A stretch of 64,000 nucleotides of DNA from Ylistrum balloti (lineage: Eukaryota), in NCBI RefSeq assembly GCF_031769215.1, contig NW_026781955.1:248001-312000 (forward strand). Reading direction: 5' to 3'. Below the pieces are notes generated by a model. The model searched no databases. It worked only from the letters and a program-made list of their open reading frames with translations, and was not told the DNA's origin. Shown here piece by piece: positions 40,554 through 60,737 of the stretch. A program made the position numbers and the translations under genes. Position 1 is the first letter of the stretch. Each line of letters starts with the position of its first letter.

Positions 40554-41834
40554 TTATGTAATAGAGATAAAAAACCACATTGCCAAAACTACAGCGACTG
40601 TAGAGAAGAAGCAGAAACAGAATCTGTCCAGAGCCGAAGAAAAGTCGACCCAGGTAAATATTTCATCAACCTTGGCTTCATATTCACAACTTTCCGTAAA
40701 CTTCTCCTTCGCTATGTAGACTGGTGGTAATTGAGCATTGTTATCCGACTTCCTGCTCATGGGGGTTATTTTCTGTGTATCTTTAACCCTGTTTTTTGCC
40801 GCATTGCTTCCACAACAGAAACTTACTCTCTTAGTGATTCTGATGAATCGTTGGATGCGCGGAGACACGTCCATGTTTTGGGGCCGATCATGAATTCGGA
40901 CCTGGACAGCGGTCAGTATGACGATTGAAGTCCCCTTGATGACTAGGATAATGAGATACACGGCCAAATAGGATGTGGTGCGAGAGTTGACGGGTAAAGA
41001 AGAACTGAATATGGTCAGCAAAACGGCAAACGCCAGATAAACTGTCATACTGTATCCCATTTTCTCTCCACTATTAACAGGAATGATGAAAGTAAATATA
41101 CTCAAGACAGAAAGTAAGATGATTGGACATATTAGGGTAAGCATGTAATGTTGGGGGCGTCGGTCCAGTGTTAAGAGGATGATCGCGTGTCCTAATACGA
41201 GTTCTATTGTGGCGGAGCGGAGTTCCCACACACCATTGGCTTCGTAAGACAACAGATTTATGGCGGGGTCCCTTAATACGAATTTCAAGTCTTGTGATTC
41301 TGTTGTCCACATTCTGAATACCAGTTTGCAAACTTGTGTATCAAATGGGAATTTTGTTATATCAATCTCGCACATGGTTTCGAGTACTTCGAACGGTTTC
41401 CATTTTGTTACACCGGAAGACCGTATTTTCACCAAAATGACGTCATCGCCAAGTTCTTTTAATTTTGTAAAGCCATTTTGAAGAGAGATGTCCGGTTTCC
41501 ACACATCGTTCTGGGGCATGTAAAAGTAAGAGATGTTACTAAAGTCAGCCTCCTCCCACGACATAAACGTGTTATTCCATTCCAACGTCAGGTGTGCGAT
41601 AGTTGTTAGTTTTTCCTCAATCTCTTCTAGACTAATGAGTCCATGAAGAGAGAATGAAAAAAATATAGGTAGCGGCCTGTTTTTGTTAACGCGGGGTAGA
41701 ATGGACTTCTGGTAGGAACGCTTGTTAAATATCTCGTTATGTAACTTTTTGTAGTCCGATCCAATTTGGGCAAGACTGACCTCTGCCAAGGATACAAGTA
41801 CCAACTGAACAATCACTGTCCGTTTGCTGATCAT
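40554..41834 (-). CDS. Divergent nAChR-like Cys-loop receptor subunit, A-type (A1), single coding exon, 426 aa
   Basis: First ATG at 41834 (the ORF track starts at an upstream TTG). Signal peptide, WKPDISLQN, Cys-loop CEIDITKFPFDTQVC, RRP, M1-M4, and PVNSGEKMG filter. No vicinal CC. Confidence 0.93.
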   Translation of the reverse strand: MISKRTVIVQLVLVSLAEVSLAQIGSDYKKLHNEIFNKRSYQKSILPRVNKNRPLPIFFSFSLHGLISLEEIEEKLTTIAHLTLEWNNTFMSWEEADFSNISYFYMPQNDVWKPDISLQNGFTKLKELGDDVILVKIRSSGVTKWKPFEVLETMCEIDITKFPFDTQVCKLVFRMWTTESQDLKFVLRDPAINLLSYEANGVWELRSATIELVLGHAIILLTLDRRPQHYMLTLICPIILLSVLSIFTFIIPVNSGEKMGYSMTVYLAFAVLLTIFSSSLPVNSRTTSYLAVYLIILVIKGTSIVILTAVQVRIHDRPQNMDVSPRIQRFIRITKRVSFCCGSNAAKNRVKDTQKITPMSRKSDNNAQLPPVYIAKEKFTESCEYEAKVDEIFTWVDFSSALDRFCFCFFSTVAVVLAMWFFISIT

Positions 41835-41968
41835 GGTTGAAATGCTCAAGACGAGTCAATGGTACAGTGGTGACTCTGTTACCTCCTGTCATGTGTTAAT
41901 ACCCTATGTTGGAATTTGATATCCCAGTTATTCAGGATTCTTGTTGTCATGTAAACTAAGGCTGATGC

Positions 41969-41976
41969 CTTTTATA
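41969..41976 (-). promoter_or_regulatory. Candidate TATA box of A1
   Basis: TATAAAAG on the minus strand, 135 bp upstream of the ATG. The homologous site upstream of pseudo-A2 (about 50165) reads GATAAAAG. Confidence 0.35.
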
Positions 41977-43169
41977 TCTGAATAAATTTTAAACTAATTC
42001 ATTTTCGTTGTTTCTTACAATCATCTGTTCAGAGAGGTACACTTTTACTACAATGAAGCAATGCATACGAACATTCACTGATCAGAGTTTTAGCTATTGA
42101 CTTAATATTCGTTTTGCAAATTGAAGTATATCTGTTGAGACAGAGTTTGTATTTTGCATATGATCGGTTTCATTAATTGTTTGATTGCGTAGTGATCGTA
42201 AGTGATAAGAACTTTTGAAATTACACAGATGTACTATTGTGAACCTCAGTGCGTTTAGATGAAATCGTGTACCCAGGAGACCATCACCAGTTGATTGTCT
42301 GTTTCACTGAAACCTTTTGTATCAGAAATTACATTTGATCATCAGTTATGAAACCAACTGATATCAGATGATTGGCAGGTTTATTTCTCATGATGGATTA
42401 TTGTATAAACAAGCAGGGTACATCGGTCTGATAAAATCGGAATTTCGACCCAGAGTGATGAAACGTAGTCTAAATACAGAGAAAAAATATTTACATAAAA
42501 ATACCACAAATACAATCAAATCAATTGTTCCGGAAGAGTTGGCGTCTTTGCTTCAATGAATACATCAACTGGGTAAATATGAAAATCTCCGACAAATCGA
42601 GGGACCATATTTCAGTCGATAGCACGTTGATCTAAGCAACATCGTGTGGAGACCCGTGGTGTATTGTTCGACTCTCTCTATCACAAATTAAATATTTAAA
42701 TAAAAACAATTATTGGACACCACAAGCTTAATAACCATTTGTCTTGGTATATATTTTGTACGATTTGGTTTATCACATTGTCTAGATACTTTTGGAAGCG
42801 TTCGTGAAAGCGGTTTTTTATGAGAATGATAAAAAAATCTAAATTTGCGATAATCCCCCGCTGTATTGCGGGCTTTAATGATGTCACAAAACCATGAAGC
42901 AATGATGTTACAACTGAAACAACCTTCAACCAATCATAGCTCTGCTAGGTCATATCACATGGTATGTGTCACAAAAATATCCCACGTGATAAGCATGGAA
43001 TTTCTGTGATAAGTTTAAATTCCTCTGACGACTAAGGGGGAATGATTAAAGCATGCGCATTTTTTAAGAATTCAAGAGACCTTTACACAATTCGAAAAGT
43101 AGATTTTTTTTCAACATAATGTTTAACTGAATAATACTTACAAGAATAGTTTTAAGGGAAGCTAAAACT

Positions 43170-43900
43170 GAACAAGTGAAAGAACTGAAATCCGTAAATA
43201 CTAGGATAAGTCTGGTATCTGATTGTTTCAGTACTGAATTCTACATTTCCTAAAGGACATGGATGTTTTTCTACCACGTGTCCTTTGTCTGTAATTCAAA
43301 AGAATTATTTCTTGTATTCCAAAGGAGAAGGCAAAACTGGCAACCTATTTCTTTATTAAATGTCCACTACAAGATATCCACTTTAGTTTAAGTAACAGAA
43401 TTATAAATATGCTGCCGAATATTCGAAATAGAACACAATCAGGTTTTATAAAAGGCTGGTTCCTTAGCATCACTGACTAGTTCTAGAAGGACAAAACAGT
43501 TGTATCATGTTAACTCTATTGTTTAACGTTAATGTTATAAAGTTACTAAAGTGTGCTATTCACTCGTGTGTCTTTATTACAATCTTCTAATACTAACACT
43601 GGGCGCCTCTGGAGGACATTATGACATTATTAGAAAAAAAATATTGTTTATCCTCGAATGAATTGACATTTGACTCAAAGGAGCGGAGTTTCATTAGTAA
43701 AGTTTTAACATCTTTTTAATTGTTGAAGTTTTGTTTTAAATCCAAAAGAGGTTTACTTAGCAGTGGTGTCTTATCAATTAGGTCGAGGTTGTCGTCAAGG
43801 TGACCCATTGCTACCATACATCTTTACAATTGGAGCGAAACTTTTATTCTTATCATTGAAATCTAATAACAAAATTGTCAAATTGGTCAATATATTGACA
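43170..43900 (+). mobile_element. Decayed L1/Tx1-clade LINE RT fragment
   Basis: SDCFSTEFY, SCIPK, NWQPISLLNVHYKIS, GFIKG, FDSKERSFISKVL and GRGCRQGDPLLPYIF appear in the expected order with frameshifts. Confidence 0.75.
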
Positions 43901-45936
43901 GTGCTTAATATCTTATACTTGATAGCAACATTCATAAATGTACAAACTTATGCATGGACTTTCACCAAAATACTAACAAAATGTTATTAATCTCGTTGTC
44001 AATAACTAAAATGATAACCTATTTTTCTCAGATCACCTAGGCCTTTTGATACGCCATTATGCACAACCAATAATTAATTCTACAGTTTTCTCTCAAATGA
44101 GTCTCACAACTAACACTGTTAATTCTGATTTTCTTAATTCCCCTCCTGCAGTATCTAACAGATATTGAATAAAGATAGAATGTATAGTGAAACTGTGTTG
44201 TCTCTGTTATTGAATCAGAGGGTAACAGAAGTGCTAATGCTGTTCTACGTGTATGTATATAATGAATGTACCTGTACATGTACATTCATGTGTGTGTGTG
44301 AATGTGTATGAGCTGTTATCATCACGAGTTACTTCCTTTAAACATTGTTAAATCTTAGTCAGAATTATCTGAAATCATGTCATATAACTGATTATCTATT
44401 AATAATTTAATTGATTATCCATTAACCCTTCATTGTTAGTCCTACTTTGACTTTTGATGGAGATAATTTATGTAGGCAGCCTGTAATTCGATCCAATTGA
44501 CTATGCAATCTCAAAATAGACTTTGATGAAATAAACTAGTCACTCACTGCAGTTTATTTATTGGAAGGTTTTAACCTAGTGTCTGGACTAATGGTAAAGT
44601 TTCACAATAGTTTACTCTGTACTGCATGGGAAATACAAAAATTACAAATGAAAGATTGTGCTATGATTTGAAGATAACATGATAAAATGCAAACTTCAAA
44701 AATGGATCATATCATTTTGGAAGTAACCTATAGTAGAGTCGTGAACTCTTACAATACTGGATAACTAACATTAATTGGGCATGTTACAATTATGAAAAAA
44801 ATATTGTATACCAGATCGGTGCATCTGTTTTCCACCTTTCCAAAGCTTTATGGAATATATTGAAACAAGTTAAAACCAAGGAAGTTTGAAAATATATTAA
44901 CATCCTTTTTGAGATATCTGATTAAAGCTTTGTTAGAAAGCCAAAGTGGGTCAGATACGTTGTCGGAAGATGTATTGTAGAGCCAAGTAAATTCTGTGCC
45001 AGGTTGAAATGTAAAGCTATGTATCCTGTGGAAAACACTAAATGGTTTGGGTACAGTTGATGATCATTTCAATAATGGGATAGTTACATCTATATATAAG
45101 TATATATAAGTCTATTGAAATGGAAATCTTATAGAAATAGACGACAATTTTAACAATTAGATATACAGTAAAAAACGTACATACTTTACTATATAGAATT
45201 AGTCATAAAACTCATTCTTCATATTGATAGAAAAATAAAACTTAATTGAGGAATACATAGACATTGTACCTTTCCATGGGCAGTGGAAATTCTAATCGGC
45301 TTTTCGGAATCCTGACGAACCCGAGAAGGACAAAACATCCGTATACGACTGTTTAATTCAGTTTTTAGGTTTATTGTCTGATAGTGTACAAATGATCAAA
45401 AATTAAAACTGTAATCAAATGAAAATGAAATAAAAAATACTGAATACTGCATAACCGTCGTCTTAACATTATCAACAAGACGCATTGCATTCTAATAGTT
45501 GCCATTTGATTTCTGATATTGATTATTCTTCTTATGTGTGACAAAAATATCTAAGATAGTTTTCACTATTGGTATGTAATAACGAAACGGTTTGATATTT
45601 TATATAATGTTTACTTGAAACTATCCCTTTGTCGTATGACTCAGGGTAAGGGTCTTCAATTACCCACTATGTCAAAGATCTTTTACAGTATCCATCTGTA
45701 GATTTTAGAGAAAAAAACACAAAATATTCAACGCAATCAATACTGTTTTCAAATGCTATACTCACACTATAAACATTCAAAATGAAGTTTTAAGCTCGAT
45801 TTAAACTTCTAATGTCACTACTTTCAGATGTCCAGATGTCTGAGTTTAAAGAGAACACCAGCTTATCACTACGCTATAAGCACTCTTTTGATTTTTTAAG
45901 CCATTTTGTCAGTAATTTCGTATATTGATGAATTGA

Positions 45937-47214
45937 TCATTGAAGTGCAGCGAAAAATACAATAGCCAAAATAATGTCAACGACACAGAAGAAACAGAAA
46001 AAGAAACCATCCAGAGCAGCACACGCGTTGGCCCATGTATACATATCGTTTTCGTCCCCCTCCTCGACACTTAGCTCCTCTAATGGTAGCTTGGATGAGT
46101 TTTTTTGCACTGCTGGGAGGTTTGGGGAAGAAAGGACGTCATTGTTAGATTTCTTTTTTGCATGTCCCTCCTTTGGTTTCACCCGTTTCGAAGAATATGC
46201 ACATATCTTCCTACTGATTCTGATAGCAAATCGCATGCTCCAAGGCAAACTCTTTTCCTTTGGTCGATGATGCAATCGAACTTGAGCGGCAGTTACCATA
46301 ACAATCACAGTTCCTTTAATCAGCAAGCTTATTACAAAAACAGCCAAGTAGGACGTAGTGCGGGAGTTGATAGGTAAAGACGAATTTACAATGGTAAGGA
46401 AAACGGCAAAGGCTAAATACGCGGTCATGCTGTACCCCATTTTCTCTCCACTATCGACAGGAATGACGAATGTGAAAATGTCCAGAAGAGACAGCAAGAT
46501 AATAGGACAGATAAGGGTAAGCAAATAATATTCGGGCCTTCGTTCTAGTGACAATAAGACAATGAAGTTGTCATTTTCTAGCAACGCTTTGGATGAGCTG
46601 ATGTCCCACTCACCGTTTTCCTTGTAAAAGGTTAGATTCAGTGCAGGTTCTGTTAACGCGAATCTCGCGTCCATTGGTTGTGATGTCCACATCCGAAATA
46701 CTATCCTGCAGATTTGTGTGTCAAATGGGAATTTAGTAATGTTTATATCACATTTGGTCTCGAAAACTTCAAACGGTCTCCACAAAATTTTTCCATTGTG
46801 CAATATCATCACCAGAATCACGTCGTCGCCGAGTTCTTTCAGTTTAGTGAATCCATTGTTTAATGAGACGTCTGGCTTCCACACTTCGTTCTGAGGCATG
46901 TAAACATAGGAAATATTATTGAAATCCCTTTTGTTCCAACTCAAAAACCCGTCTTCCCATTCTAGCCTCAAATAAGCAGTGGTTGTTAGTTTTCCCTCCA
47001 CCTCGTCCAGGTTGTTGATGCCATGCAGAAAGAAAGCAATATGTATTTTGGTGGGCTCTTTTGAACTCTCGAAAGGTGGGACGACTTTCTTGTAATTACG
47101 TTTGTCAAACAACTCATCGTATAAATTCTTGAGATCCATTCTTGTATGGGTAAGAACTATTTGAACCACAGATATCAGTGTAAGTAGAGCAAGTATTGTC
47201 CTCCTCCTTGCCAT
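45937..47214 (-). CDS. Divergent nAChR-like Cys-loop receptor subunit, B-type (B1), single coding exon, 425 aa
   Basis: Signal peptide, WKPDVSLNN, CDINITKFPFDTQIC, RRP, M1-M4 and PVDSGEKMG. No vicinal CC. Confidence 0.93.
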   Translation of the reverse strand: MARRRTILALLTLISVVQIVLTHTRMDLKNLYDELFDKRNYKKVVPPFESSKEPTKIHIAFFLHGINNLDEVEGKLTTTAYLRLEWEDGFLSWNKRDFNNISYVYMPQNEVWKPDVSLNNGFTKLKELGDDVILVMILHNGKILWRPFEVFETKCDINITKFPFDTQICRIVFRMWTSQPMDARFALTEPALNLTFYKENGEWDISSSKALLENDNFIVLLSLERRPEYYLLTLICPIILLSLLDIFTFVIPVDSGEKMGYSMTAYLAFAVFLTIVNSSLPINSRTTSYLAVFVISLLIKGTVIVMVTAAQVRLHHRPKEKSLPWSMRFAIRISRKICAYSSKRVKPKEGHAKKKSNNDVLSSPNLPAVQKNSSKLPLEELSVEEGDENDMYTWANACAALDGFFFCFFCVVDIILAIVFFAALQ

Positions 47215-47899
47215 CGTGATGATATTGACTGTATGAAACAGGTCTGTGAAGACAATAACAGCTAGATTTGTTTTTTTAAATTAGTGTGTTTTGCATCAAT
47301 GCTTTGCCATAAATTTTTATGTTCACACGCCCCGATGCTGTTACATGTATCGATTACATTACAAAGCAAGGTCAGGTGAACACCACACACTTTGTTTTCA
47401 TAAACCTGCATTATTCGTTACACTTGAAGACCTATACAACAATGCACTGAAGTAATAAACATAGTGTACAAGAGTCATTCTATTTCAATTAAAAACCAAT
47501 TTATTTATTTATTGAACTCTAGTTTCGATTTGATGATCAGTATGATAACAACTATGAACAATTATAGAAAGTGCACTAGAATAAAGTAAGGACTGCAATG
47601 TCCCATGACTGGAATAATGTGACGTATATAACGTACATGACGTTTGTGACGTTAGGCTATCAGATAAATTGTACTGCTCTTTGGAATTTACATGGAAATA
47701 TTATCATTGATGTAGAACAATTGTCCCAGGGGACTGTCGCTATTGTTTTATATGTTTGTTGATGTTGATGAGAAATCGTAACATGGAAATAACAATTATG
47801 ACAATATCTCTAAATGTTTTTACCAAGGGAACGCCATTTAAAGGATTTGTGGCATGGCGACACACGATCGATTTTCCATTTTTTGGTTTTCAGTTTAAA

Positions 47900-48260
47900 T
47901 TAAATAATGAATCTAAAGTACACAGTGAAACATTTATTTTTCTTGAAAAAGATGACATATGCGATTGCAGTGCCACCTGCAAGAGATTTCCTGACATTCT
48001 TATAACCGTACTGCACTAAATATTCGAAAGCTAACACAGGGAATTCAAGGGAAGATTCTTCAATCTTAGTCCTTCGACCTCTTAGACAGTTCAGACTCGT
48101 TTCGTACACGTTTTGCTAAATCATTTCCTGTATTTAGCCACAACTTCATTCTACCAACGGAAACTTCTTTTTGGGATCTGATGAAGAGAACACGGGCCCA
48201 CATAAGCAATTAACGTTTGCCAAAACAATTTTAAGCAAACAGCTGATATTACATAAAATA
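47900..48260 (-). mobile_element. Possible heavily decayed CR1/L2-type LINE fragment
   Basis: Minus-strand pieces GP..IP, SGNL..RW..AYVIFFKKNK..YFRFI loosely resemble the pre-RT region (GPDxIP...WKxANVxPIFKKG..NYRPISL). Confidence 0.25.
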
Positions 48261-49749
48261 GTTTGATGTCAACTCGGTTTTGAAATAGAAAAAAATCTTA
48301 ACTGTTTTAATCTAGAATGGTAAGATTAATAACCCATCGTGTAATAGGGATATATCTGACAGCACAGGTTTCCTCAAGGCGCTCTCCTTGGTCTAGTCCA
48401 ATCAAAATAATATGTCTGTATCGAGTTTTTTTTAATGTATATGTCTTGTTAGATGAAAAATAAAGCTGCGTTGCTTCGTTAAGATTTACAATTTTATATT
48501 TTAAATGGGAAATCCTGTTAATAATACGGGTACATACGACAACAAACTCATATGGCATCCTACTTACTTCAAAATAAATATCAATTAAAAAATAAAAGAT
48601 GTCATTTTTTGAAACTGGTTTTCCTGTTCAAGTGTGTTTTTACATATAACGTCTACATTGAAAACCAATTATTACGTAGAACATCTAAAGGTAACTATGT
48701 ATGCTGCTGAAAATGGTCAATATGTTGCCATATGACAAGTTAACGGTGCGTGAGATAATGGAATTCGTTGTATTTAGTGTAGAGCTGCTTTAAATAATTT
48801 GTTTTCATTAAAGTACCCTATCATGCAACACCTTATTTGAGAAAGATATATTAACAATTATTTGGAAAAAGCAGGAGACTTCAATTGTCAGAATTAAATA
48901 TGACTGCTTATCTGTCATTTGGTTGTTTGATTGGTTACAAATATGCACATCTAGGTCTAATACAAAAAATCATGTAAAAACTGGAGAGCGATTAATCCTA
49001 CACTTAATAAGTTATTTTTTGTTGTATGATTCTACCATGTACTCTCAGTGCTTTGGTATTCAGTCAAAATTAGAGGGTAGACGAAAAGCAGTCCAAAACT
49101 CTTGGCAGATGGGGGGCATGATTGCTTTTGATATGCAATTTGTTTTAAAATCATACCACATTAGCCGATTATCGTATATCATTTTAAAGGCCATTACATA
49201 TGCTGTTTATCAGCGTAACTGGATTGTGATTTGAAAGAAATTTTCTTATGACCTAAGTCAGAGAAAAGGCCCACAGGGTTCCTTTTTTTCTAGTATCGGT
49301 GTAGGTGGCACTGCAGTCAGAATAATGGTTCAACATGTGTTTAACTGTTGTTATAATTTTTGCTTTAATGCAGTTGGCTAATTTAGATAAAAAATATTTT
49401 CACAAATATTACAGGCCCTTTTTCACCCTTTATGCAACATCTCTTGTGCAAAATTTCAAAAGTAATGAAAATTGTTGGTTGACCAGTTTCCGAGCCTTTC
49501 GTAATCAAATAGAAAAATAACCTTGAATATAAAGTGAAGACTTATCTCAATCTTACACCACTGTGTCTTTTGGTTTTGAATAAGATATCGAAATGTTTAA
49601 GGTCGTGAATGGCCTGTACCCCAAGACCCTAAAATAGAAAGTTTGCTGACTTTTTATCTTCTTGGCTTGATGCCTTTTGCCTCAACATCATATCAACGAT
49701 GAACATAGTAGACAGAAATACTAGGAAACTACTGTGTTTTGGTTTTATA

Positions 49750-50180
49750 GAAAATATCAATTGTTAACGCATGTGCAAGGACTGGAATCAAACGTTGTAT
49801 AACCATGAACATGAAAGAGGGGTCACATTAGATAACGCCCTGTCTTTGTTAACGCTGGAGAGAATGGTCTTCTGATATGAACGCTTGTTAAATATGTAGT
49901 TATATAACGTTTTGTAGTCCAATCCCATTTGCTTAAGACTGATCTTTGCCATGGATACGAATGTTAACAAAACAACCGTTCCTTCATTGTTGAAATGCTG
50001 CTTTTGCAATCCTTGATAAAGTCAATGCTCAAGATGGGTCAATTATTTATTGTTAGCTCAGTTACCTCCTGTTAAAATAATATGTGTAATTTCATATCCC
50101 AGTGGTTCAGGGTTATCGTTTTCTCCGTTCCACAAAGATTTGTTGTGTGAATCAATACTGGTGCCTTTTATCGTAATTTA
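49750..50180 (-). pseudogene. Truncated A-type receptor pseudogene (pseudo-A2)
   Basis: KISLKQMGLDYKTLYNYIFNKRSYQKTIL..VNKDR aligns to A1 EVSLAQIGSDYKKLHNEIFNKRSYQKSIL..VNKNR. The homologous ATG (49987) reaches TAA after 7 codons. Homology ends after about 70 codons. Upstream motifs (acaggaggtaac, ctgggatat, ataaaaggc) are shared with A1. Confidence 0.85.
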
Positions 50181-52591
50181 GATTTTTAGAATCGCAATAT
50201 TTTAGCCTCCTTCTATCATTCAAAAGGCAACATGTATCGTGTCGTATTTTATGATTATTTAGAATTATAACTTAAGATAAATTAGGTTTTCAAATTTGCC
50301 GAAATAGGACAATATTTTCTTATTTCAAGGCGATTTTCCGCTTTGTGATTGAATATTCTTTCTTTCGATGTTATTCGAACGATAATGAAGCCAAGGTTTA
50401 GCAACGATCAACATAAGACAGACAGTGTCATTGATCAGTTGGCAAATCAGGTACTCGACCAAGTGAAATGAACTCCGTAAGTTTTCAGAGATAGACGCAT
50501 AAACGACGTCTAAGAAATGACATCTTACAGCCCTCATTGCTAGATGAGTCAGAAGAGTTATAGCACAGTCAATGATACGTTTGTAATACAAGGACATTTC
50601 ATATAGCACAAGAGAGATCCTGACGTTGCTATGATCCAGCCTTTTGTGAGTGGAAATTGAACAGTGCCAAACATCTCGAATTCTACGTCTCCGATTTCCA
50701 CTTGTGAAATATCAGCATACTAATTTCTTTTCTGATAGATATTCCCGAGCTACATGATCAAAATGTTTTTTGTTATTCAAAGACAACATTACGTATAGAC
50801 ATGTAAGTAATTTAAAGGATTTCTGAGGAGCTCTTTCAGTTTCTAGTGAAAACGTATGTTCGGTCATGAAGGGACGCAATTAATTACCTATCATGAATGC
50901 GAAATCAATAAGTATTCTGTTAATGATTTTTTTATTTACTGCGAAACTTCACTTATAGACCACTTCATTACAAAACCATTATTCAATTGTTATAAAAAAA
51001 ACTAGACGTATACCAAGTCTGGCATCCTGCTATTAAGATTCGATTTGTCTGAAACCCAAGGTGATATTAAAGAGAGGTTTCACTGTTACAGAATATAATT
51101 CTTACCAAGACCACATATAGGATTTTCTTGAATACATTATTTCATTGATTCTATCAAATTCCATATCATAGTACTTTCCTCGAATTGTCTGGAGTTCCTT
51201 ACCAATATTTGGTAAAATAAATAGCAGAGAACAAAGATTGAAGGGAGAATCAGACAAGGAATGAAACCGTCACGAACCAGAAAAAACAGTGCGTCATCAC
51301 AAATAAAGACAAATTACTACATGCCAACTTTGCGAAAGGACGCGTATTTCAAGTTTTGAAAAATCGTGCTATATTCATTGGCAATATTATAAAATATGTG
51401 ATGTTTAATTGCGCCTGTTACGATACAAAACATCTATATCATTCATGTATTTTTTAATGAAAGATAGAGTGTCAGAGAATATTCTTACATTCATTTGCTA
51501 CGTAGTCTTTCAATAATTTGATTTCACATTACAAGTTCTAAAGCGATATAGAATATAAAAACTAGGTTAGAAAATAAACCGGATACTTCCTCGCCTCCAC
51601 TTGAAGCATATAAACATTTTCACGAAATATTCATAAGATGGACAGAGCATGGGATGAAAAAAAATCAACAAATATGTATTAGAGATTGCAAATAATTGAC
51701 ACAGCTGGTGTACATTCAATACCAGACATTCCCTGGAACCTGCATGTCACGTTTTAATTCATTCGAATAGTTCTTTAATACTGATTTGCTGACGTCCTTT
51801 CAAGATTTTCAGATGTATGAAAATACTAGTTCACCTCTTTTTGTAGATTTGACATTTCTTTCAATCAAATCGAATTTTCTTGTGTTGCCTCATAGATTTC
51901 CAAATTAAGGAACTTCACAGCATTAACTGGTTTCAGAAGGATGAAACAGTGGTATGATGCAGTTTGGTTCATTGTTTGATTCTACTGTATCTAACTTTGT
52001 ATTGAAAAGTGTATCTTTTGTATAACAATAAAAACTGTAGGTGGTTTTCATTTTAAGGGTCTGATGTTTGTTGTTACCTGCCACGTTGTAATAGTACGTG
52101 TATATTTAATATTCAGGTATATTAAACATTGCGTAGTCATAGAGGGACGTAAAAACATTGTAATGCAGATCAATTAATTATTTGGGACTACTATATCAGA
52201 TTCTAAATTTGAATTGAAATATGCTGTTTACTTTTATGTCTTTTGTACAACCAAAGGGAGATTACTTTTAAAGTTAAAATGTTAAAAGAACGCACTCTTA
52301 TATGGAATGACATTTTCCCTCTGCTTCAAGACTCCAAAAAAGGATCAGCATATCATAGAAGACTTTGGTCATCGATCTTATTTATGAATAGAGCAAAATA
52401 TTTCTTACAATCCATACTGTAATCAGTATGTTATACTCAATTTGTAGACAGTTTTACTCATATAAGTTTAAAACATCAACATTTTAGGTATCTGGATTGA
52501 CACAAATTATAGGCTTATCACGTTCTTACTATCAATGTCAGTGATCATAAATCACATTATCCATTATGTCATGGATATAATGAAACACTGT

Positions 52592-53884
52592 TCAAGGAAG
52601 TGCCGCGAAAAATACGATCGACAAAATAACAGCAACAACAAAAAAGAAACAGAAAAAGAAACCATCCAGAGCATCACAAGCATTTGCCCAGGTATAAATA
52701 TCATTTTCGTCCTCTTTGACGTCACTTCGTCCGTCAAGTGGTAGTTTGGATGGTTCAGAATGTTTCTGCGCTATAGTTAGGTGTTGAGAGTCTTGGACGT
52801 CAACCTTCAATTTCTCCTTCTTTGTATTATCCGTGTTTGGTTTTACACGTGTCGAAGAACAAGAACGCATCCACCGACTGATCTCGATAACACGTCGCAA
52901 GTATTGAGGAAGGTCTGTTTTACTTGTGCGTTGATGAACTCGCACTTGGATAGCAGTTACCATAACGATGGTAGTACCTTTTATCAGCAAGCTGATAACA
53001 AAAACAGCCATGTAGGAAGTAGTGCGAGAGTTGATAGGTAAGGACGAATTTATAATGGTAAAAAAAACAGCGAATGCTACATATGCGGTCATGCTGTATC
53101 CCAATTTTTCTCCACTATTGGCAGGAATAACGAATGTGAAGATGTCCAGAAGAGACAGCAAGATAATGGGACAGAGGAGAGAAAGAATATAATACTGGGG
53201 TCTTCGATCCAGTGTCAGTAAAACAACGACGTTGCCATTTTGTAGCATAACCTCGGCTGAGTCGAGGTCCCAAACACTGCTTTCTTTATAAGTATCCATT
53301 TTCAGCGCGGGTTCAGATAACTCGAATTTCACGTCGAGTGGTTGTGATGCCCATAGCCGAAATACCAACTTGCATACTTGAGTGTCAAATGGGAATTTTG
53401 TAATGTCTATATCACAATTGGTCTCAAACACTTCAAACGGCCTCCACACTATGTTTCCAGTGTGCATTATCGTCACTTGGATCACTTCGTCGCCTAGTTC
53501 CCTCAGTTTGTTGAACCCATTGTTCAATGAGACGTCTGGCTTCCATACTTCGTTCTGAGGCATGTAAATATAGGAAATGTTATTGAAATCTTTCTTGTTC
53601 CAGGTCAAAAACGCGTCATGCCACTCTAGGGTCAGATGTGCTGTCGTTGCTAATTTCCCTTGCACCTCATTGAGACTGTTAATACCGTATAAATCGACAG
53701 TAACGCGTACATTGATTGGCTGTTTTAGACTTTCAAAAGGTGGGACGACTTTCTGGTAGTTACGTTTGTTCAGTAACTCGTCGTACAAATTCTTGAGGTC
53801 CATTCCTGTCTGGGTAAGACCTATTTGAACCACAGAAATCAGTGTAAATATAACAGTTAATGTCTGCCTCCATGCCATCTGCAT
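52592..53884 (-). CDS. Divergent nAChR-like Cys-loop receptor subunit, B-type (B2), single coding exon, 430 aa (428 from the second Met at 53878)
   Basis: Signal peptide, CDIDITKFPFDTQVC, PANSGEKLG, M2 9' = Val and M1-M4. No vicinal CC. Confidence 0.93.
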   Translation of the reverse strand: MQMAWRQTLTVIFTLISVVQIGLTQTGMDLKNLYDELLNKRNYQKVVPPFESLKQPINVRVTVDLYGINSLNEVQGKLATTAHLTLEWHDAFLTWNKKDFNNISYIYMPQNEVWKPDVSLNNGFNKLRELGDEVIQVTIMHTGNIVWRPFEVFETNCDIDITKFPFDTQVCKLVFRLWASQPLDVKFELSEPALKMDTYKESSVWDLDSAEVMLQNGNVVVLLTLDRRPQYYILSLLCPIILLSLLDIFTFVIPANSGEKLGYSMTAYVAFAVFFTIINSSLPINSRTTSYMAVFVISLLIKGTTIVMVTAIQVRVHQRTSKTDLPQYLRRVIEISRWMRSCSSTRVKPNTDNTKKEKLKVDVQDSQHLTIAQKHSEPSKLPLDGRSDVKEDENDIYTWANACDALDGFFFCFFFVVAVILSIVFFAALP

Positions 53885-55169
53885 GATGCTGACTGTTTAA
53901 AACAGGTCTGTGAAGACAATAGTAACTTGTTCTAAACTGTTTTGTTTCAGTGTGTTATTCAAACATTTTTCTCTGTTCATCTTGACACTCTCCAATGCTT
54001 TATTGATGTATTGTCATGTGAACACACAGCCATCACCGAATTGACAGGTCTACTTTCTCTATGAAATCCCTACTGAAGCGTTCTGATTATTCATAGTACG
54101 ACAGAGCTCTCTAAATAGATATAAAAAAATGTACAAATAATCAATCTGTAGCAAAACATAATAATAAACTCAATGCTTGCTTTGATGACCAACATGACAA
54201 TAACCTCAAATAATAACAGAAATGTACCAGAATTGATTAAACACTTCAATCTCCCTTGACTGATATAATGTTAGATCAATATTGTAACATAATCAGAGAA
54301 GGTGATACCGAATATTATTAATGTTTTTTTGTTTGTTGATATTTATCAGAAATCATGTCTAACAAATAAATATTGTGATGACTATACCTCTTAATGGCTA
54401 TACTGGGAATGTCATTCCATTATGTGAATTATTTTTAAAAACCGATGAAAATTGTTGGCACCTCATTTTATGAGTTCGGCATATTTAAACAGAGCCTGAA
54501 GTCCTATTTTAATTTCAACGATGACTGGTTTTTTAATAGAAAATAACAAATTGTTAACGCATGTTCAGGTACTGGAACCCAAAACCTTATAATTAAAACT
54601 TGTTGCTCTAGTTTTTCTTGTTTAGGTGCTACAAATGTGTTTTAACCGTAATATTAACGATTAAGACAAACGGTAATTAGGATTACGTTAAATATGAAAA
54701 AGGTACGAAATGATTTTTCATGGAAAACTGGATGTCTTTATAAGTACTTAATCAATTGTGAACAGGTATCTGTTTTGATTTTTAATCTTGATGATAGTCA
54801 TTTAGAAAAAAAGCGAAAAAGTAAATGCCTTATTACACAGAGGCCATCCTTCACTTAAAGCTTTTAATGACACTTCTAAAATTATTGGTGATATAACGAA
54901 TATTTTAATTGACTGTTAGGCAGATGATCGACATAAACATTGGATATATCCATGACACTGACATATCAAAACCTAAAATTCAAATTACCTGCTGAAAAAA
55001 AATTCTGATAAAACATATTAAATGATTGTTAAAGTAAGAGTATTTACCAAGCAGGAGAGAAAAAAAGTTTAATTGTCTGAAGCTGGCAGCTGCTCAAATC
55101 CAGTTTATGTACGAAACGTGTAAGTGTGTTTGGACATATTCTTTCACAGAAATAGTAAAAATACATCGT

Positions 55170-55400
55170 TAGTACCATGTGTTTGTTAAAATGGAGTAAA
55201 ATGACATTCTAGTACGATAACTGGGTACTAACCAGCCTTTTTGGACAAGACTAACCTTTGTCCAATATACAGCTACGAACAACATAAATACTGTCCGCCT
55301 GCTGAGCATTTGAGGAAATGTTGCTTTTGGAATCCCTGATCGACTTATGCTTAGGACGGGTAATTGATTCATTGATGACTCAGTTACATCATGCAAAATT
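55170..55400 (-). pseudogene. Truncated A-type receptor pseudogene (pseudo-A3)
   Basis: ATG at 55309: MLSRRTVFMLFVAVYWTKVSLVQKG aligns to A1 MISKRTVIVQLVLVSLAEVSLAQIG, then decays. The upstream gtaactgagtca motif is shared with A1 and pseudo-A2. A detached homologous piece at about 54545-54580 matches about 49758-49790. Confidence 0.7.
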
Positions 55401-57329: not shown

Positions 57330-57540
57330 TCGGACCTATGTGTGGTTCGATTCCTTATCCGGTGGCTTTTGTTTTACTTTGCTGACATATTTGTGTCCTT
57401 TATCAAATTGTTTACCCTGGTTACTCTCATTGAATTGCAATGAGCTCCCACATTAAGTTGGGTACCATATAGCCATACACTGCTACACGAACACACTACT
57501 TCATAATTACCTTGGTAAATCCTGAGGCAATAAACACAGC
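57330..57540 (+). mobile_element. Degenerate tRNA-derived SINE
   Basis: B-box ggttcgattcc (about 57345), then gtgtcctt..aa..tttaccct (CORE-like) and gggtacc. Confidence 0.4.
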
Positions 57541-59429
57541 AATCATCTCTTGAAACCCCTAATGTTTTTTTCTATTTTCTTACGTCTCTCATTTTTCAAT
57601 GAAATTGGTACATAACCACCCCAACACCCAAAAAAGGAAAAAAAAAAAGAAAAAAAGACAGAAATATCACAATCTAATCATGAATATTTATTAAGATTGA
57701 AATCGAAATTACCGCCCGTATCGCGCAGCTTCTAGATATGATAACCACCGGTTTATTGTTATAAAACAAACAACCTTATTCAGTGACTGAAAATATTGAC
57801 AAAATAAACCGTAAGCAAAGTCTGCATGCTTAGGCATTCTCACTATTCAGACCATCTCGCTATGAAGACTTCCCAGCCCACAAGTGTTTTTAAATAGAGC
57901 GTTCACTGCAGTAGAACATAATTCATTAACACTTACATCAATTTTCTGAAACTTGATTCCATTGATTCATGTTCAAGAGTACTTTCATCTGACAACAAGA
58001 CAAGACCTTTCGACACTTTTCGGCAAAACGAATAGTGAAGATCAAAATATAGCATGATGTATGAAACCGTCATTTCCATTGTAAATATAAAACTAGAGTC
58101 TACAGGTCATCGCGTCATCACAAAGGGTCACAAACTGCTAGGTAACACTAAAACGAATGCATGTATAAGAAAACGTTTTAACTACGGATTATGTTCATCA
58201 GCAAGAAATTATATAATGTGATTTTGTTACGACAGGAATAATGTTCATATCAAAATTATGAATATCTTACCGCAGATTTAGTTACTTTCTAAAGAAAGAT
58301 TGTTTCTCAACTGATATTTGTATGTTCATGCTTAACTTGCCAAACGGGGAAAACACTCAATACCGAAGTTAGATTTCTATATCCGATCGCTTTGCCATCT
58401 TATAGAGGAGCAACTCAGTTTAAGCAATTTCTTTATTTCAACTTTTTTCACTCAACAAGTTCTAATACAGATGTATAATATGAAATTAGGTTTGGAAAAC
58501 AAGCTAAAACAGTGTCTCTATCCCTCACTTTGATGCTACAGCAATATGTGAATATTTACACTAAACTTCGGTGAGATGGGACACAACATTTGATAACAAA
58601 CAATATTTATGCCAGTCTCCTATTAATGACAGCAAGAAGTTTCATTTGGAAGCAAAAAATCGTATATCATTACCTACATAGTTTTCAATCTATATAGTAA
58701 TTTATATACATAGAAGAAATAATAATTAGTTTAGTGTAGGAGGCTTAGTTCTCTTTCATTACTACAACGTCACATGAATTTCTTAAATTTCCAAGCTTCC
58801 CCCACTGCGATGGATTCTGAGTGCGTCTAGTTTCTCTCAGACTTAAAATGAAATATATGTTTATTGCTAATATTGGAATTTCGAATTTATAAATTAGTAA
58901 ACGTTAGGTACCTGCGTTTAGCGGCACTGACGGGTCCTTGCTTATCAGATATACAAATCATATGAAATCTATTGATTTATGCGGCTTGTGCTATCGAGAT
59001 TTTTACATCTTGTTTTTCTTCACTCGACAACCAGGTTTCTCAGTTTAGTCCCATGTCATCACAGACAAGTCCTCGAAGGACGAAACAGTTCTATAATGCA
59101 GTTAATCCTGGGTTTTCTGGTTTTTGTTAATTTGTGATATTCAAGGACAATCTAAGGGAGATAATCCTTACTATTGAAATGTAATGAATGAAACAGTTTT
59201 ATTTCCTCAACAAGAATTACTCCTCGTATCACACAATTATTTTGTATCGCTGTTATTGACAGGGCAAGTTCAATATAGCCCATGCAGTTATCAAATTGTT
59301 TACGCAAACTGTAGACATTTAAAATAAAGCGACTCTTAAACATCACAACTTTCAAGTGTCTGAGATAATACAGATCTGCTAATCAGTTTACAACGGTCCT
59401 TGTTTTCAGTCACGTGATCAGTCGTTTCG

Positions 59430-60737
59430 TTAATACAATGATGCAGTGTTCAAAGAAATACCGCAAAAAAATATGATAGTCATAAAAAAAGCTGCAACAA
59501 AGAAGAAACAGAAAAAGAAACCATCTAGAGCAGCACAAGCGTTGGCCCATGTATACATATCGTTTTTCTCTTCCTCTTCATCCTCACTTCGCTCATCTAA
59601 GGGTAGTTTTGATGATTCTTTCTTCGATGCTGGAAGGTGTTGGGAGTTGTGGACGTCAATGTTTGATTCCTGATTGTTTACGTTATCCGTTTGTGGTTTT
59701 ACACGTGTCGTAAAACATGCACGTATCCACCTACTAAACCTGATAAAATGTCTCAAGCACCTGGGAAGGTCCTTGTCATTTCGACGATGATGCAGTCGAA
59801 CTTGAACAGCAGTTACAACAACAATGGCAGTTCCTTTGACCAGTAAACTTACGACAAAAACAGCCAAGTAGGACGTAGTGCGGGAGTTGATAGGTAAAGA
59901 CGAACGGATAATGGTAAGGAAAACGGCAAAGGCTAAATACGCGGTCATGCTGTACCCCATTTTCTCTCCACTATCGACAGGAATGACGAATGTAAAAATG
60001 TCTAGAAGAGACAGCAAGATAATAGGACAGATAAGGGTAAGCAAATAATATTCGGGCCTTCTATTTAGTGACAATAAGACAATGAAGTTGCCATTTTCTA
60101 GAACAATATTTGCGGAGTGGAGGTCCCACACACTATTTTCTTCGTAAGTGTCAAGATGCAGTGTTACCGGTTCGTTTAACTTGAATTTCACGTCTTGTGG
60201 TTGCAATGTCCATAACCGAAATATCAACTTGCAGACTTGAGTGTCAAATGGGAATTTAGTAATGTTTATATCACATTTGGTCTCGAACACTTCCATTGGA
60301 TTCCATATCACTTTTCCAGTGTTCATTACCGTCACTTGGATCACGTCGTCGCCTAGTTCCTTCAGTTTGGTGAAACCATTGTTCAATGAGACGTCTGGCT
60401 TCCATACTTCGTTCTGAGGCATGTAAATATAGGAAATGTTACTAAAATCTTTCCTGTTCCAGGTTAAAAATGCGTCTTGCCACTCTAGTGTCAGATGTGC
60501 TGTCGTTGCTAATTTCCCCTCCACGTCATCCAGACTGTTAATACCGTGTAGATGGAAAGCAACACGTACAGTGATGGCCTCTTTTAGGCTTTCATAAGGT
60601 GGGGTGACTTTCTGGTATTTGCGCTTGTTCATTAACTCATCGTATAAATTCTTGAGGTCAATTCCTGTCTGAGTAATAACTATTTGAACCAAAGAAATCA
60701 GTGTGAGTAGAGCAAGTACTATCCGCCTCGGTGCCAT
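59430..60737 (-). CDS. Divergent nAChR-like Cys-loop receptor subunit, B-type (B3), single coding exon, 435 aa
   Basis: Signal peptide, CDINITKFPFDTQVC, PVDSGEKMG and M1-M4. The C-terminus is extended by a +1 shift in a T7 run. Confidence 0.92.
   Translation of the reverse strand: MAPRRIVLALLTLISLVQIVITQTGIDLKNLYDELMNKRKYQKVTPPYESLKEAITVRVAFHLHGINSLDDVEGKLATTAHLTLEWQDAFLTWNRKDFSNISYIYMPQNEVWKPDVSLNNGFTKLKELGDDVIQVTVMNTGKVIWNPMEVFETKCDINITKFPFDTQVCKLIFRLWTLQPQDVKFKLNEPVTLHLDTYEENSVWDLHSANIVLENGNFIVLLSLNRRPEYYLLTLICPIILLSLLDIFTFVIPVDSGEKMGYSMTAYLAFAVFLTIIRSSLPINSRTTSYLAVFVVSLLVKGTAIVVVTAVQVRLHHRRNDKDLPRCLRHFIRFSRWIRACFTTRVKPQTDNVNNQESNIDVHNSQHLPASKKESSKLPLDERSEDEEEEKNDMYTWANACAALDGFFFCFFFVAAFFMTIIFFCGISLNTASLY

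What the first reader, a model, noticed from the sequence alone, without database searches (positions are those of the whole stretch)
40554..60737. Tandem cluster of intronless, non-cholinergic nAChR-like channels: candidate chemosensory receptor system
Seen: four intact single-exon paralogs on one strand at 5.4-6.9-kb spacing plus two pseudogenes. All have a signal peptide, Cys-loop, four TM helices and a GEK cation filter, but a degenerate ACh site. Established: canonical nAChR genes are intron-rich; bivalves have large nAChR expansions that include intronless tandem copies; cephalopod chemotactile receptors are intronless, clustered nAChR derivatives that lost ACh binding and sense poorly soluble compounds. 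Inference: this is an independent or related birth-and-death family that detects non-ACh ligands, possibly as A/B heteropentamers. The function is not demonstrable from sequence.
Basis: partly seen in the sequence, partly recalled or inferred. Interest (0 to 1): 0.8.

Follow-up and report, generated by a model that had tools for sequence, protein, structure and literature searches.

The report
Scallop orphan nicotinic-like channel gene array
Four intact neighbouring scallop genes encode nicotinic-receptor-like cation-channel subunits that lack the normal acetylcholine pocket; they are real and under selection, but they belong to a published bivalve-wide gene expansion, and the proposed smell/taste role remains untested.

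Summary
Four intact, same-strand, single-coding-exon Cys-loop receptor genes (A1, B1, B2, B3; 425-435 aa) lie at the stated coordinates, with two short dead-copy relics between B1 and B2. Each gene has a signal peptide, a C-x13-C Cys-loop, M1-M4, a GEK/9'-Leu cation-type pore and intact gating-coupling residues. The classical ACh site is gone: no loop-A Tyr, no loop-C Tyr/Cys-Cys/Tyr, and loop-D Trp replaced by His/Tyr. Loop C is an 11-residue-shortened stub. The loop-B Trp is retained. dN/dS of 0.3-0.37 and conserved synteny with Pecten and Mizuhopecten show functional, old genes. B1-B3 form a lineage-specific (or conversion-homogenised) group, and B3 is a B2/B1 mosaic.

This is a pectinid subclade of the intronless, tandem nAChR expansion already described in bivalves (Jiao 2019). 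This scan has noted many similar arrays on other DNA of the same genome. The proteins are no closer to octopus/squid chemotactile receptors (20-26 % identity) than to human alpha7/beta2 (25-26 %), so any resemblance is parallel rather than shared ancestry. No window of the ligand domain shows omega >1. No RNA data exist for this species. A chemosensory role is possible but unsupported; an accessory non-alpha subunit role is at least as likely.

The parts
40554..41834 (-). A1: intact single-exon CDS, 426 aa, A-type nAChR-like subunit; last gene of the array, next to a convergent TPR gene
   Evidence: ORF; Pfam PF02931 E 2.6e-36 and PF02932 E 9.4e-14; identical to database protein P0009; sister to Pecten P0012 with SH-aLRT 99
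45937..47214 (-). B1: intact single-exon CDS, 425 aa. The deposited model P0003 starts at Met26 and so lacks the signal peptide.
   Evidence: a second DNA data set shows no stop or frameshift, only a 6-bp in-frame insertion
49830..50123 (-). Relic 1: N-terminal piece (aa 13-61) plus 5' flank of a dead A-type copy
   Evidence: tblastn to A1 gives 61 % over 49 aa, E 9e-15; blastn 41666-41948 against 49829-50123 gives 70 %; family HMM iE 4e-5
50361..50672 (-). Relic 2: badly decayed beta10-M1...M3 piece of another dead copy (M2 deleted, more B-like). It lies upstream of relic 1 on the minus strand, so it comes from a different gene.
   Evidence: tblastn to B1 aa 272-318 gives 36 %, E 2e-4; HMM positions 276-327, iE 0.07, against noise of iE about 3 in 40 kb of control sequence
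52592..53884 (-). B2: intact single-exon CDS, 430 aa
   Evidence: identical to P0002
59430..60737 (-). B3: intact single-exon CDS, 435 aa; first gene of the array. It is a mosaic: LBD codons 31-150 are B2-like and M1-M3 is B1-like.
   Evidence: identical to P0001; nt identity 92-94 % to B1 in codons 211-300 with dS 0.20, and 85-91 % to B2 in codons 31-150; AF2 model pLDDT 88.4
60231..60275 (-). B3 Cys-loop (codons 155-169, C-x13-C with FPFD)
   Evidence: both Cys residues and P163, F164, D165 and Q167 are invariant in 61 relatives
60060..60128 (-). B3 beta9-loop C-beta10 (codons 204-226): 21 residues between the GxW Trp and the pre-M1 Arg, with a 2-residue hairpin turn and no Cys-Cys or Tyr
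   Evidence: 21 residues in this clade, 25-26 in other bivalve relatives; DSSP gives E204-214 and E217-226
59898..59972 (-). B3 M2 pore helix (codons 256-280): -2'G, -1'E, 0'K, 9'L, 13'V, 20'S; cation-type filter
   Evidence: E258 invariant, L268 and V272 at least 90 % conserved

Best explanation
The region is a four-gene tandem array, ordered B3, B2, two dead relics, B1, A1 on the minus strand. Each gene has an intronless coding sequence and encodes a nicotinic-type Cys-loop receptor subunit. The genome is a scallop assembly (GCA_031769215.1). The array is a pectinid-specific subclade of the large intronless, tandemly duplicated nAChR-like expansion already described in bivalves.

Shown here:
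- Each gene encodes a complete subunit with conserved gating-coupling elements (Cys-loop FPFD, pre-M1 Arg, M2-M3 Pro) and a cation-type pore (GEK, 9' Leu).
- The genes are under purifying selection.
- The locus is syntenic in other scallops.
- The classical acetylcholine aromatic box and loop-C lid are absent.
- The array evolved by tandem duplication, gene conversion and gene death.

Inferred: the subunits assemble into pentameric cation channels that are not opened by acetylcholine through the classical site. Their true agonist, partners and tissue are unknown.
For: Gene integrity: Pfam LBD plus TM domains. AF2 pLDDT 88.4 with the full pLGIC topology. Z 32, rmsd 2.1 A over 343 residues to nAChR structures.

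Conserved residues: invariant C155, C169, P163-F164-D165, R226, E258 and P282 across 61 relatives.

Selection: dN/dS is 0.30-0.37 overall and 0.14-0.21 in M1-M3.

Phylogeny: a clade of 12 with SH-aLRT 100 holds the window's four genes, pectinid proteins and two unlabelled Logan sequences. A1 is sister to Pecten P0012. B1-3 are monophyletic and sister to the Pecten/Argopecten B genes.

Synteny: Pecten has a same-strand three-gene array followed by a convergent TPR gene. An exon of that TPR gene matches window 33639-33790 at 92 % aa. Mizuhopecten has the same A-type/TPR junction.

ACh site: losses at loops A, C and D in all four genes and in more than 100 bivalve relatives.

Known phenomenon: PMC6896357.
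Against: No expression data exist for this species, so function as expressed channels is inferred only from selection and conservation.

The loop-B Trp is retained and B1 has Tyr at the loop-D position, so some cation-pi ligand binding cannot be excluded.

The Pecten A-type ortholog carries a frame change. This could be an assembly error, or it could mean the A gene is dispensable.

B1-3 monophyly may partly reflect gene conversion rather than recent duplication.
Confidence: 0.8

Rival explanations
1. One reading: the array is an ionotropic chemosensory receptor system, functionally parallel to cephalopod chemotactile receptors. It would detect non-ACh, possibly poorly soluble, environmental compounds, perhaps as A/B heteropentamers.
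For: Shared traits with CRs: intronless, clustered, ACh site lost, loop C shortened. PMC11536092 states that CRT1's loop C is short relative to other Cys-loop receptors.

Within the ectodomain, variability is highest in loops C, F, B and E.

Bivalve nAChR-like genes as a class are most expressed in gill, a water-facing organ (PMC6896357).

A 2026 preprint raises the same idea for divergent molluscan clades (PMC13174522).
Against: There is no expression or ligand evidence at all.

No 30-codon window reaches omega 1; the ectodomain maximum is about 0.48. By contrast, CR pocket residues are reported to be under positive selection (bioRxiv 10.1101/2025.03.03.641191).

There is no special similarity to CRT1/CRB1.

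Loops C and F are the most variable parts of any pLGIC family, so one search is weak evidence.

About a hundred genes in this genome share the same traits according to earlier unchecked scan notes, so the traits are not specific to a sensory subfamily.

A evolves as fast as B, unlike a co-receptor.
Confidence: 0.15
2. They are derived non-alpha (beta-like) accessory subunits. They would co-assemble with alpha-type subunits encoded elsewhere and diversify the kinetics, conductance or localisation of otherwise ACh-gated receptors, so the system would remain cholinergic.
For: The best solved matches for the ligand-binding domain are the vertebrate non-alpha subunits beta4 and beta2 (E about 1e-25), followed by the gamma, beta1 and epsilon chains. 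For the whole protein the best matches are the Torpedo beta chain and beta4/beta2.

The retained FR(L/M)W loop-B motif resembles that of beta2 (from memory of the beta2 sequence).

Most bivalve nAChR-like genes are non-alpha (99 of 132 in C. gigas, PMC6896357).
Against: The loop-D Trp that beta2-type complementary faces use is replaced by H/N/Q/Y and varies within the clade.

Loop C is 7 residues shorter than in Torpedo beta.

No alpha-type member occurs anywhere in the 100+ closest relatives, so the radiation as a whole has no in-family partner.
Confidence: 0.2
3. They are channels gated by ions or protons rather than by an organic ligand, like the zinc-activated channel ZAC or bacterial GLIC, which also have very short C loops.
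For: ZAC's loop C is reported as much shorter than in other Cys-loop receptors (PMC11536092). Here loop C is a 2-residue turn. His occupies the loop-D position in three of the four genes.
Against: Only 18-20 % structure-based identity to ZAC, with lower Z than to nAChRs. No conserved acidic or His cluster was identified. This is analogy only.
Confidence: 0.05
4. They are unexpressed retrocopies drifting towards pseudogenes.
For: Two dead relics lie in the same array. Jiao 2019 reports that more intron-poor than intron-rich copies have no or low expression. The Pecten A-type gene has a frame change.
Against: The four ORFs of 425-435 codons are intact in 31-39 % GC DNA. dN/dS is 0.3, and 0.14-0.21 in the pore. 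Orthologs and synteny are conserved across scallop genera at dS above 1. A second haplotype or individual has no disabling change in B1.
Confidence: 0.03

Closest known systems
Bivalve intronless, tandemly arrayed nAChR-like gene expansion (Jiao et al. 2019, BMC Genomics, PMC6896357)
   Same: Intronless coding sequences, same-strand tandem arrays, stepwise lineage-specific duplication with gene loss, loss of principal ACh-binding residues, bivalve host. Phylogenetically nested among scallop, mussel, oyster and unionid members.
   Different: This is a pectinid-specific subclade on a long stem branch (0.71 substitutions per site). It has a further 4-5-residue shortening of loop C (21 against 25-26 residues) and loss of the aromatic residue at the loop-D position. 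The paper did not describe this locus or species.
Cephalopod chemotactile receptors CRT1/CRB1 (PDB 9E6B/8EIS, 8EIZ)
   Same: nAChR-derived, intronless, clustered, ACh-insensitive pocket, shortened loop C, cation channels (PMC11526382, PMC11536092).
   Different: No specific relatedness: 26 % and 20 % structure-based identity with Z 22-23, against 26 % and Z 29.6 for human alpha7. No cephalopod hit was listed in the homology searches. No sign of omega above 1. No ligand or sensory-organ expression is known.
Alpo4, orphan nAChR-like receptor of the annelid Alvinella pompejana (PDB 8BX5; PMC10338036)
   Same: A lophotrochozoan nAChR-like subunit without the loop-C Cys-Cys, with the loop-B Trp retained, and unresponsive to ACh or 5-HT as far as tested; an orphan. 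Z 26.2, 23 % identity.
   Different: Alpo4 keeps the aromatic residues of loops A, C and D and a full-length loop C, and has a Met ring constricting the pore. The scallop proteins lack those aromatic residues, have a stub loop C and have a conventional 9'L/13'V pore.
Vertebrate non-alpha nAChR subunits (beta2, beta4, muscle beta1)
   Same: Best sequence matches among solved structures. No loop-C Cys pair; GEK filter; same fold (Z 29-32).
   Different: About 25 % identity. Loop C is 7 residues shorter than in Torpedo beta. The loop-D Trp is lost. The intracellular loop is short (about 75 aa). The coding sequence is intronless.
Zinc-activated channel ZAC (PDB 8WGE, 8YX6)
   Same: A cationic Cys-loop receptor with an unusually short loop C and a non-neurotransmitter agonist.
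   Different: 18-20 % identity. Vertebrate lineage. No evidence of metal or proton gating here.

Membership tests
Cys-loop pentameric ligand-gated ion channel superfamily | Extracellular LBD (PF02931) followed by a four-helix TM domain (PF02932) | tested here: met
   All four proteins pass both Pfam cut-offs. The AF2 model shows a beta-sandwich plus M1-M4. Z 32 to nAChR structures.
Cys-loop pentameric ligand-gated ion channel superfamily | Disulfide Cys-loop C-x13-C with the FPFD coupling motif | tested here: met
   C155 and C169 with FPFD in all four genes; invariant in 61 relatives.
Cation-selective nicotinic-type branch | -1' Glu (GEK) without a -2' Pro insertion; 9' Leu gate | tested here: met
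   M2 reads GEK(M/L)GYSMT(A/V)Y(L/V)AFAV in all four genes. The nearest solved structures are nAChRs. Ion selectivity itself was not measured.
ACh-binding (alpha-type) nAChR subunit | Vicinal Cys-Cys at the tip of loop C | tested here: not met
   No Cys in the 21-residue beta9-beta10 span of any of the four genes.
ACh-binding (alpha-type) nAChR subunit | Aromatic box: loop A Tyr, loop B Trp, two loop C Tyr | tested here: not met
   Loop A is N/Q. The loop C tyrosines are absent and the loop is truncated. Only the loop B Trp (W176 in B3) is kept.
Bivalve intronless tandem nAChR-like expansion (Jiao 2019) | Intronless coding sequence | tested here: met
   There are uninterrupted ORFs from ATG to stop, and the Pecten orthologs P0004 and P0005 are also single-exon. 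A 5'-UTR intron cannot be excluded without RNA.
Bivalve intronless tandem nAChR-like expansion (Jiao 2019) | Tandem same-strand arrangement and nesting among bivalve paralogs in a tree | tested here: met
   Four genes on one strand at 5.4-6.9 kb spacing. The clade is nested within scallop, mussel, oyster and unionid sequences, with gastropod sequences as outgroup.
Cephalopod chemotactile receptors (CRs) | Membership of the CR clade (closer to CRT1/CRB1 than to canonical nAChRs) | tested here: not met
   CRT1 gives 26 % identity at Z 22.3 and CRB1 gives 20 % at Z 23.1. Human alpha7 gives 26 % at Z 29.6 and beta2 gives 25 %. CRs are absent from the top 60 PDB sequence hits. No cephalopod hit was listed. 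A formal tree that includes CRs could not be built here.
Cephalopod chemotactile receptors (CRs) | Activation by poorly soluble hydrophobic compounds and insensitivity to ACh | not testable with these tools
   Requires electrophysiology.
Cephalopod chemotactile receptors (CRs) | Expression in peripheral sensory epithelium | not testable with these tools
   No RNA run exists for this organism. The only holder, X1, is genomic DNA.
Cephalopod chemotactile receptors (CRs) | Diversifying selection on pocket residues | tested here: inconclusive
   The sliding-window omega maximum in the LBD is about 0.48, and no window reaches 1. Site models with dense sampling were not run.

The most novel reading that the evidence does not exclude
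The pectinid-specific subclade with a stub loop C and no aromatic box forms A/B cation channels that act as peripheral sensors of environmental cues (organic compounds, or ions/pH as in ZAC). This would be an independent, convergent recruitment of nAChR-derived channels for sensing in bivalves, parallel to cephalopod chemotactile receptors.
Probability: 0.15. Interest if true: 0.7.

Novelty: new member of a known kind. Interest (0 to 1): 0.3.

Why it matters
If these channels have a non-cholinergic agonist, they would help explain why bivalves keep a hundred or more nicotinic-like genes, and would be a second, independent case of neurotransmitter receptors turned into other kinds of sensors. 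As it stands, the locus is a clean, well-conserved example: an A/B pair, a stub loop C, gene conversion and dead relics. It could serve as a compact test set of four genes for de-orphanising the bivalve expansion. It does not add a new kind of system.

Tried and rejected
1. Tree with cephalopod CRs. I could not import CR sequences. Two word-index searches, one with B3 and one with the nearest gastropod relative P0101, listed no cephalopod protein. As a substitute I used the cluster-representative structural search, which lists CRT1, CRB1, Alpo4 and ZAC side by side.

2. Expression. The runs search found only one holder, and it proved to be genomic DNA. The two Logan contigs carrying clade members P0010 and P0011 have no poly(A) tail and carry an opposite-strand ORF, so they cannot be called transcripts.

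3. Third relic at 55235-55309 (A-type signal-peptide-like, tblastn E 0.077). The family HMM does not support it, so I left it as a weak candidate.

4. A as a conserved co-receptor. Rejected: A1 to its Mizuhopecten ortholog has dN 0.27, the same as B3 to its Pecten counterpart.

5. Window-level positive selection in the LBD. Not seen.

6. Papers. Van Giesen 2020 and Allard 2023 are not held. Searches for a scallop nAChR expression survey and for the assembly accession found nothing useful. A search for the octopus genome paper's text on atypical nAChR-like genes also found nothing useful.

7. The large representative protein search was not used. The claim does not rest on absence of relatives.

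Full report
OBSERVATION. They are the only ORFs of 300 codons or more in the 64 kb; the other long ORFs are translated minisatellites. A1's biological start is the ATG at 41834, giving 426 aa, identical to database protein P0009. B2 and B3 are identical to P0002 and P0001. The deposited B1 model (P0003) begins at Met26 and so lacks the signal peptide that the full ORF encodes. All four match Pfam Neur_chan_LBD (E 1e-36 to 1e-41) and Neur_chan_memb. B-B identity is 67-70 % and A-B identity is 48-51 %. Start-to-start spacing is 5.4, 6.7 and 6.9 kb.

ANATOMY. An AlphaFold2 model of B3 built on 61 relatives is confident (pLDDT 88.4, pTM 0.77). It shows an N-terminal hydrophobic helix (residues 2-21, the signal peptide), the alpha1 helix, a ten-strand beta-sandwich, M1 (228-251), M2 (259-280), M3 (290-316), an MX helix, a disordered loop of about 55 residues, and MA/M4 (397-434). 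It superposes on nAChR structures at Z 32 with rmsd 2.1 A over 343 residues.

The Cys-loop is C-x13-C with FPFD. M2 reads GEK-M-G-Y-S-M-T-A-Y-L(9')-A-F-A-V(13'), with Ser at 20'. Columns invariant across 61 relatives include both Cys-loop cysteines, P163-F164-D165, the pre-M1 Arg226, the -1' Glu258 and the M2-M3 Pro282. The machinery that couples the ligand domain to a cation-type pore is therefore conserved.

THE ACh SITE. I mapped positions using the HMMER alignment to the Torpedo beta chain, the motif spacing WxPD+4 for loop A, and second Cys-loop Cys +7 for loop B. The loop-A Tyr is Asn (B genes) or Gln (A1). The loop-B Trp is retained in all four. The loop-D Trp is His (A1, B2, B3) or Tyr (B1). 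Between the GxW Trp and the pre-M1 Arg there are only 21 residues, with no Cys-Cys and no Tyr. The same span is 28 residues in Torpedo beta and 32 in Torpedo alpha1 (my count from memory). In the model, beta9 (204-214) and beta10 (217-226) are joined by a two-residue turn, so there is no loop-C lid.

This is not special to the locus. All of the more than 100 nearest relatives from scallops, mussels, oysters and unionids lack the Cys pair and the loop-A Tyr, and nearly all keep the loop-B Trp. Their loop-C span is 25-26 residues; the window's clade has lost a further 4-5.

RELICS. tblastn, blastn and a family HMM run over all six-frame peptides agree on two relics between B1 and B2. The first is an A-type N-terminal piece with its 5' flank at 49830-50123 (E 9e-15; HMM iE 4e-5). 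The second is a badly decayed beta10-M3 piece with M2 deleted at 50361-50672 (E 2e-4; HMM iE 0.07). The best noise hits in the 40 kb control region have iE about 3. On the minus strand the M3 relic lies upstream of the N-terminal relic, so they derive from two different dead copies. The original array therefore had at least six genes, and the order (B-like relic, A-type relic, B1, A1) fits duplication of a B+A unit. That last point is inference. A third candidate at 55235-55309 is not supported by the HMM.

EXTENT AND ORIGIN. The window comes from assembly GCA_031769215.1, contig JAUZWB010000211.1. The only other gene called within 10 kb upstream of B3 has a CUB domain. No further LGIC sequence exists in window 1-40.5 kb. 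The array is therefore complete as four genes.

The closest named proteins are automatic 'nAChR subunit-like' models from Pecten maximus, Mizuhopecten yessoensis and Argopecten irradians at 55-58 % identity. In a tree of 59 sequences (IQ-TREE, LG+C20, quick search with SH-aLRT support only), the window's genes fall in a clade of 12 with support 100 on a long stem. That clade contains only pectinid sequences plus two unlabelled Logan contigs. A1 is sister to Pecten P0012 (99), with Mizuhopecten P0006 next. B1-B3 are monophyletic (99) and sister to Pecten P0004/P0005 plus Argopecten P0008.

Pecten has a same-strand array P0005-P0004-P0012 followed by a convergent TPR gene. An exon of that TPR gene matches window 33639-33790 on the plus strand at 92 % aa identity. 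In Mizuhopecten, A-type P0006 is likewise next to the convergent TPR gene. The A/B split and the locus thus predate these scallop lineages, and B genes duplicated, or were homogenised, separately in each.

SELECTION AND CONVERSION. Nei-Gojobori dN/dS between B paralogs is 0.30-0.37 overall. By domain it is 0.23-0.37 in the LBD, 0.14-0.21 in M1-M3 and 0.38-0.61 in the intracellular loop, with dS 0.48-0.64. At ortholog level dS is above 1 with dN/dS 0.15-0.19. The genes are therefore functional and old.

Similarity between paralogs ends within about 45 bp of the CDS, as expected for neutral spacers at this dS.

B3 is a mosaic. Codons 211-300 are 92-94 % identical to B1 (dS 0.20), while codons 31-150 are 85-91 % identical to B2. 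This agrees with an earlier first-reader note, and it cautions that B monophyly may partly reflect concerted evolution.

In pooled sliding windows of 30 codons, no window reaches omega 1. The LBD maximum of 0.40-0.48 lies over loops E, B, F and C, which are also the most variable ectodomain segments by entropy. A1 and its Mizuhopecten ortholog differ as much (dN 0.27) as B3 and its Pecten counterpart (0.27), so A is not a slowly evolving co-receptor.

INDEPENDENT DATA. The only public run holding the locus is genomic DNA. It gives even depth of about 10x across genes and spacers, and its contigs tile 45500-51499. It supports the assembly and shows 0.5 % differences. In B1 there are six synonymous and six replacement codon changes and one in-frame 6-bp insertion, with no disabling change. 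Codons 276-277 switch from VN to the B3 state IR. No RNA run exists, so expression is untested.

COMPARISON WITH KNOWN SYSTEMS. Jiao et al. 2019 (PMC6896357) reported 99-217 nAChR genes in bivalves. [quoted passage not shown] The Alpo4 study classified Pecten and Mizuhopecten sequences into mollusc-specific families and discussed orphan, ACh-insensitive lophotrochozoan receptors (PMC10338036). A 2026 preprint places CRs as a mainly cephalopod clade, with a broader 'CR-like' clade, and suggests that divergent clades may be chemosensory (PMC13174522). Earlier notes of this scan list many similar arrays on other DNA of this same genome, and their follow-ups reached the same reading.

In the cluster-representative structural search, the model is as similar to human alpha7 (26 % identity, Z 29.6), beta2 (25 %) and 5-HT3A (25 %) as it is to octopus CRT1 (26 % over 286 residues, Z 22.3). 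It is more similar to those than to squid CRB1 (20 %), Alpo4 (23 %) or ZAC (18-20 %). With the LBD alone, the best solved sequence matches are beta4 and beta2 (E about 1e-25), and no CR is in the top 60. The cluster is therefore not a member of the CR family. The shared traits (intronless, clustered, lost ACh box, short loop C; PMC11536092) are parallel.

MECHANISM AND VERDICT. Shown: complete nAChR-type subunits under selection, with a cation-type pore and intact coupling elements, no classical ACh site and a stub loop C, evolving by tandem duplication, conversion and death at a locus conserved among scallops.

Inferred: they form pentameric cation channels that are not opened by ACh through the classical pocket (confidence 0.8 for this overall reading, including membership of the published expansion).

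What opens them is unknown. I put about 0.2 on an accessory non-alpha role in cholinergic heteromers, about 0.15 on environmental chemosensing, about 0.05 on ion or pH gating and about 0.03 on silent decay; the rest is an unidentified endogenous ligand. The finding is real but ordinary for a bivalve genome: a new member of a known kind.

Noticed in passing
window 59430-60737 compared with 45937-47214 and 52592-53884: B3 is a mosaic. M1-M3 (codons 211-300) is 92-94 % nt identical to B1 (dS 0.20), while LBD codons 31-150 are 85-91 % identical to B2. This indicates gene conversion across 6.7-13.5 kb.
   Followed up: yes
window 45937-47214 (B1) in run X1: SNP density in the second DNA data set is about 3x higher in the B1 CDS (15 in 1278 bp) than in the spacers (17 in 4722 bp). 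Codons 276-277 change from VN to the B3 state IR, and codon 81 (the loop-D position) changes Y to F. There is a 6-bp in-frame insertion after 46095. These could be segregating conversion tracts or cross-assembly of paralogs.
   Followed up: partly
window 33639-33790 and 35216-35311, plus strand: Exons of a large TPR-repeat gene, convergent with A1, match the gene that flanks the Pecten array (92 % aa over 50 residues). The same neighbour flanks the Mizuhopecten A-type gene. The ORF at 25007-25432 may be another exon of this gene.
   Followed up: partly
L002:13655-14963 (Pecten maximus LR736846.1): The Pecten A-type ortholog is conserved end to end with an intact Cys-loop. Its reading frame changes near 14052 (frame 3 to frame 1), and the RefSeq-style model P0012 (392 aa) hides this by skipping the Cys-loop region. 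This is either an assembly indel or a recent pseudogene.
   Followed up: partly
window 45937-47214: The deposited protein model for B1 (P0003, 400 aa) starts at internal Met26 and lacks the signal peptide that the full 425-codon ORF provides.
   Followed up: yes
window 47215-47257, 53885-53921, 60738-60742: About 40 nt directly upstream of the ATG are conserved among the B genes (they translate as ..IVFTDLF..), and similarity stops beyond that. This may be a short 5' UTR or the 3' end of a 5'-UTR intron.
   Followed up: no
window 55235-55309, minus strand: A weak A-type signal-peptide-like relic (48 % over 25 aa, E 0.077) lies between B3 and B2. The family HMM does not support it.
   Followed up: partly
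window 9946-10347, 14747-15498, 19624-19915, 26085-28300, 31554-32145, 32834-33303, 62811-63888: There are several large minisatellites with periods of 52, 29, 40, 39, 14, 55 and 51 bp. The 39-bp array spans 2.2 kb and has a strong C-over-G skew. These arrays produce the long repeat-derived ORFs listed.
   Followed up: no
L006:6663-7886 (Argopecten irradians CM084273.1): In Argopecten the B-type gene P0008 has a partial LBD-only gene (248 aa) on the opposite strand 2 kb upstream, so the array is rearranged or decaying in that species.
   Followed up: no
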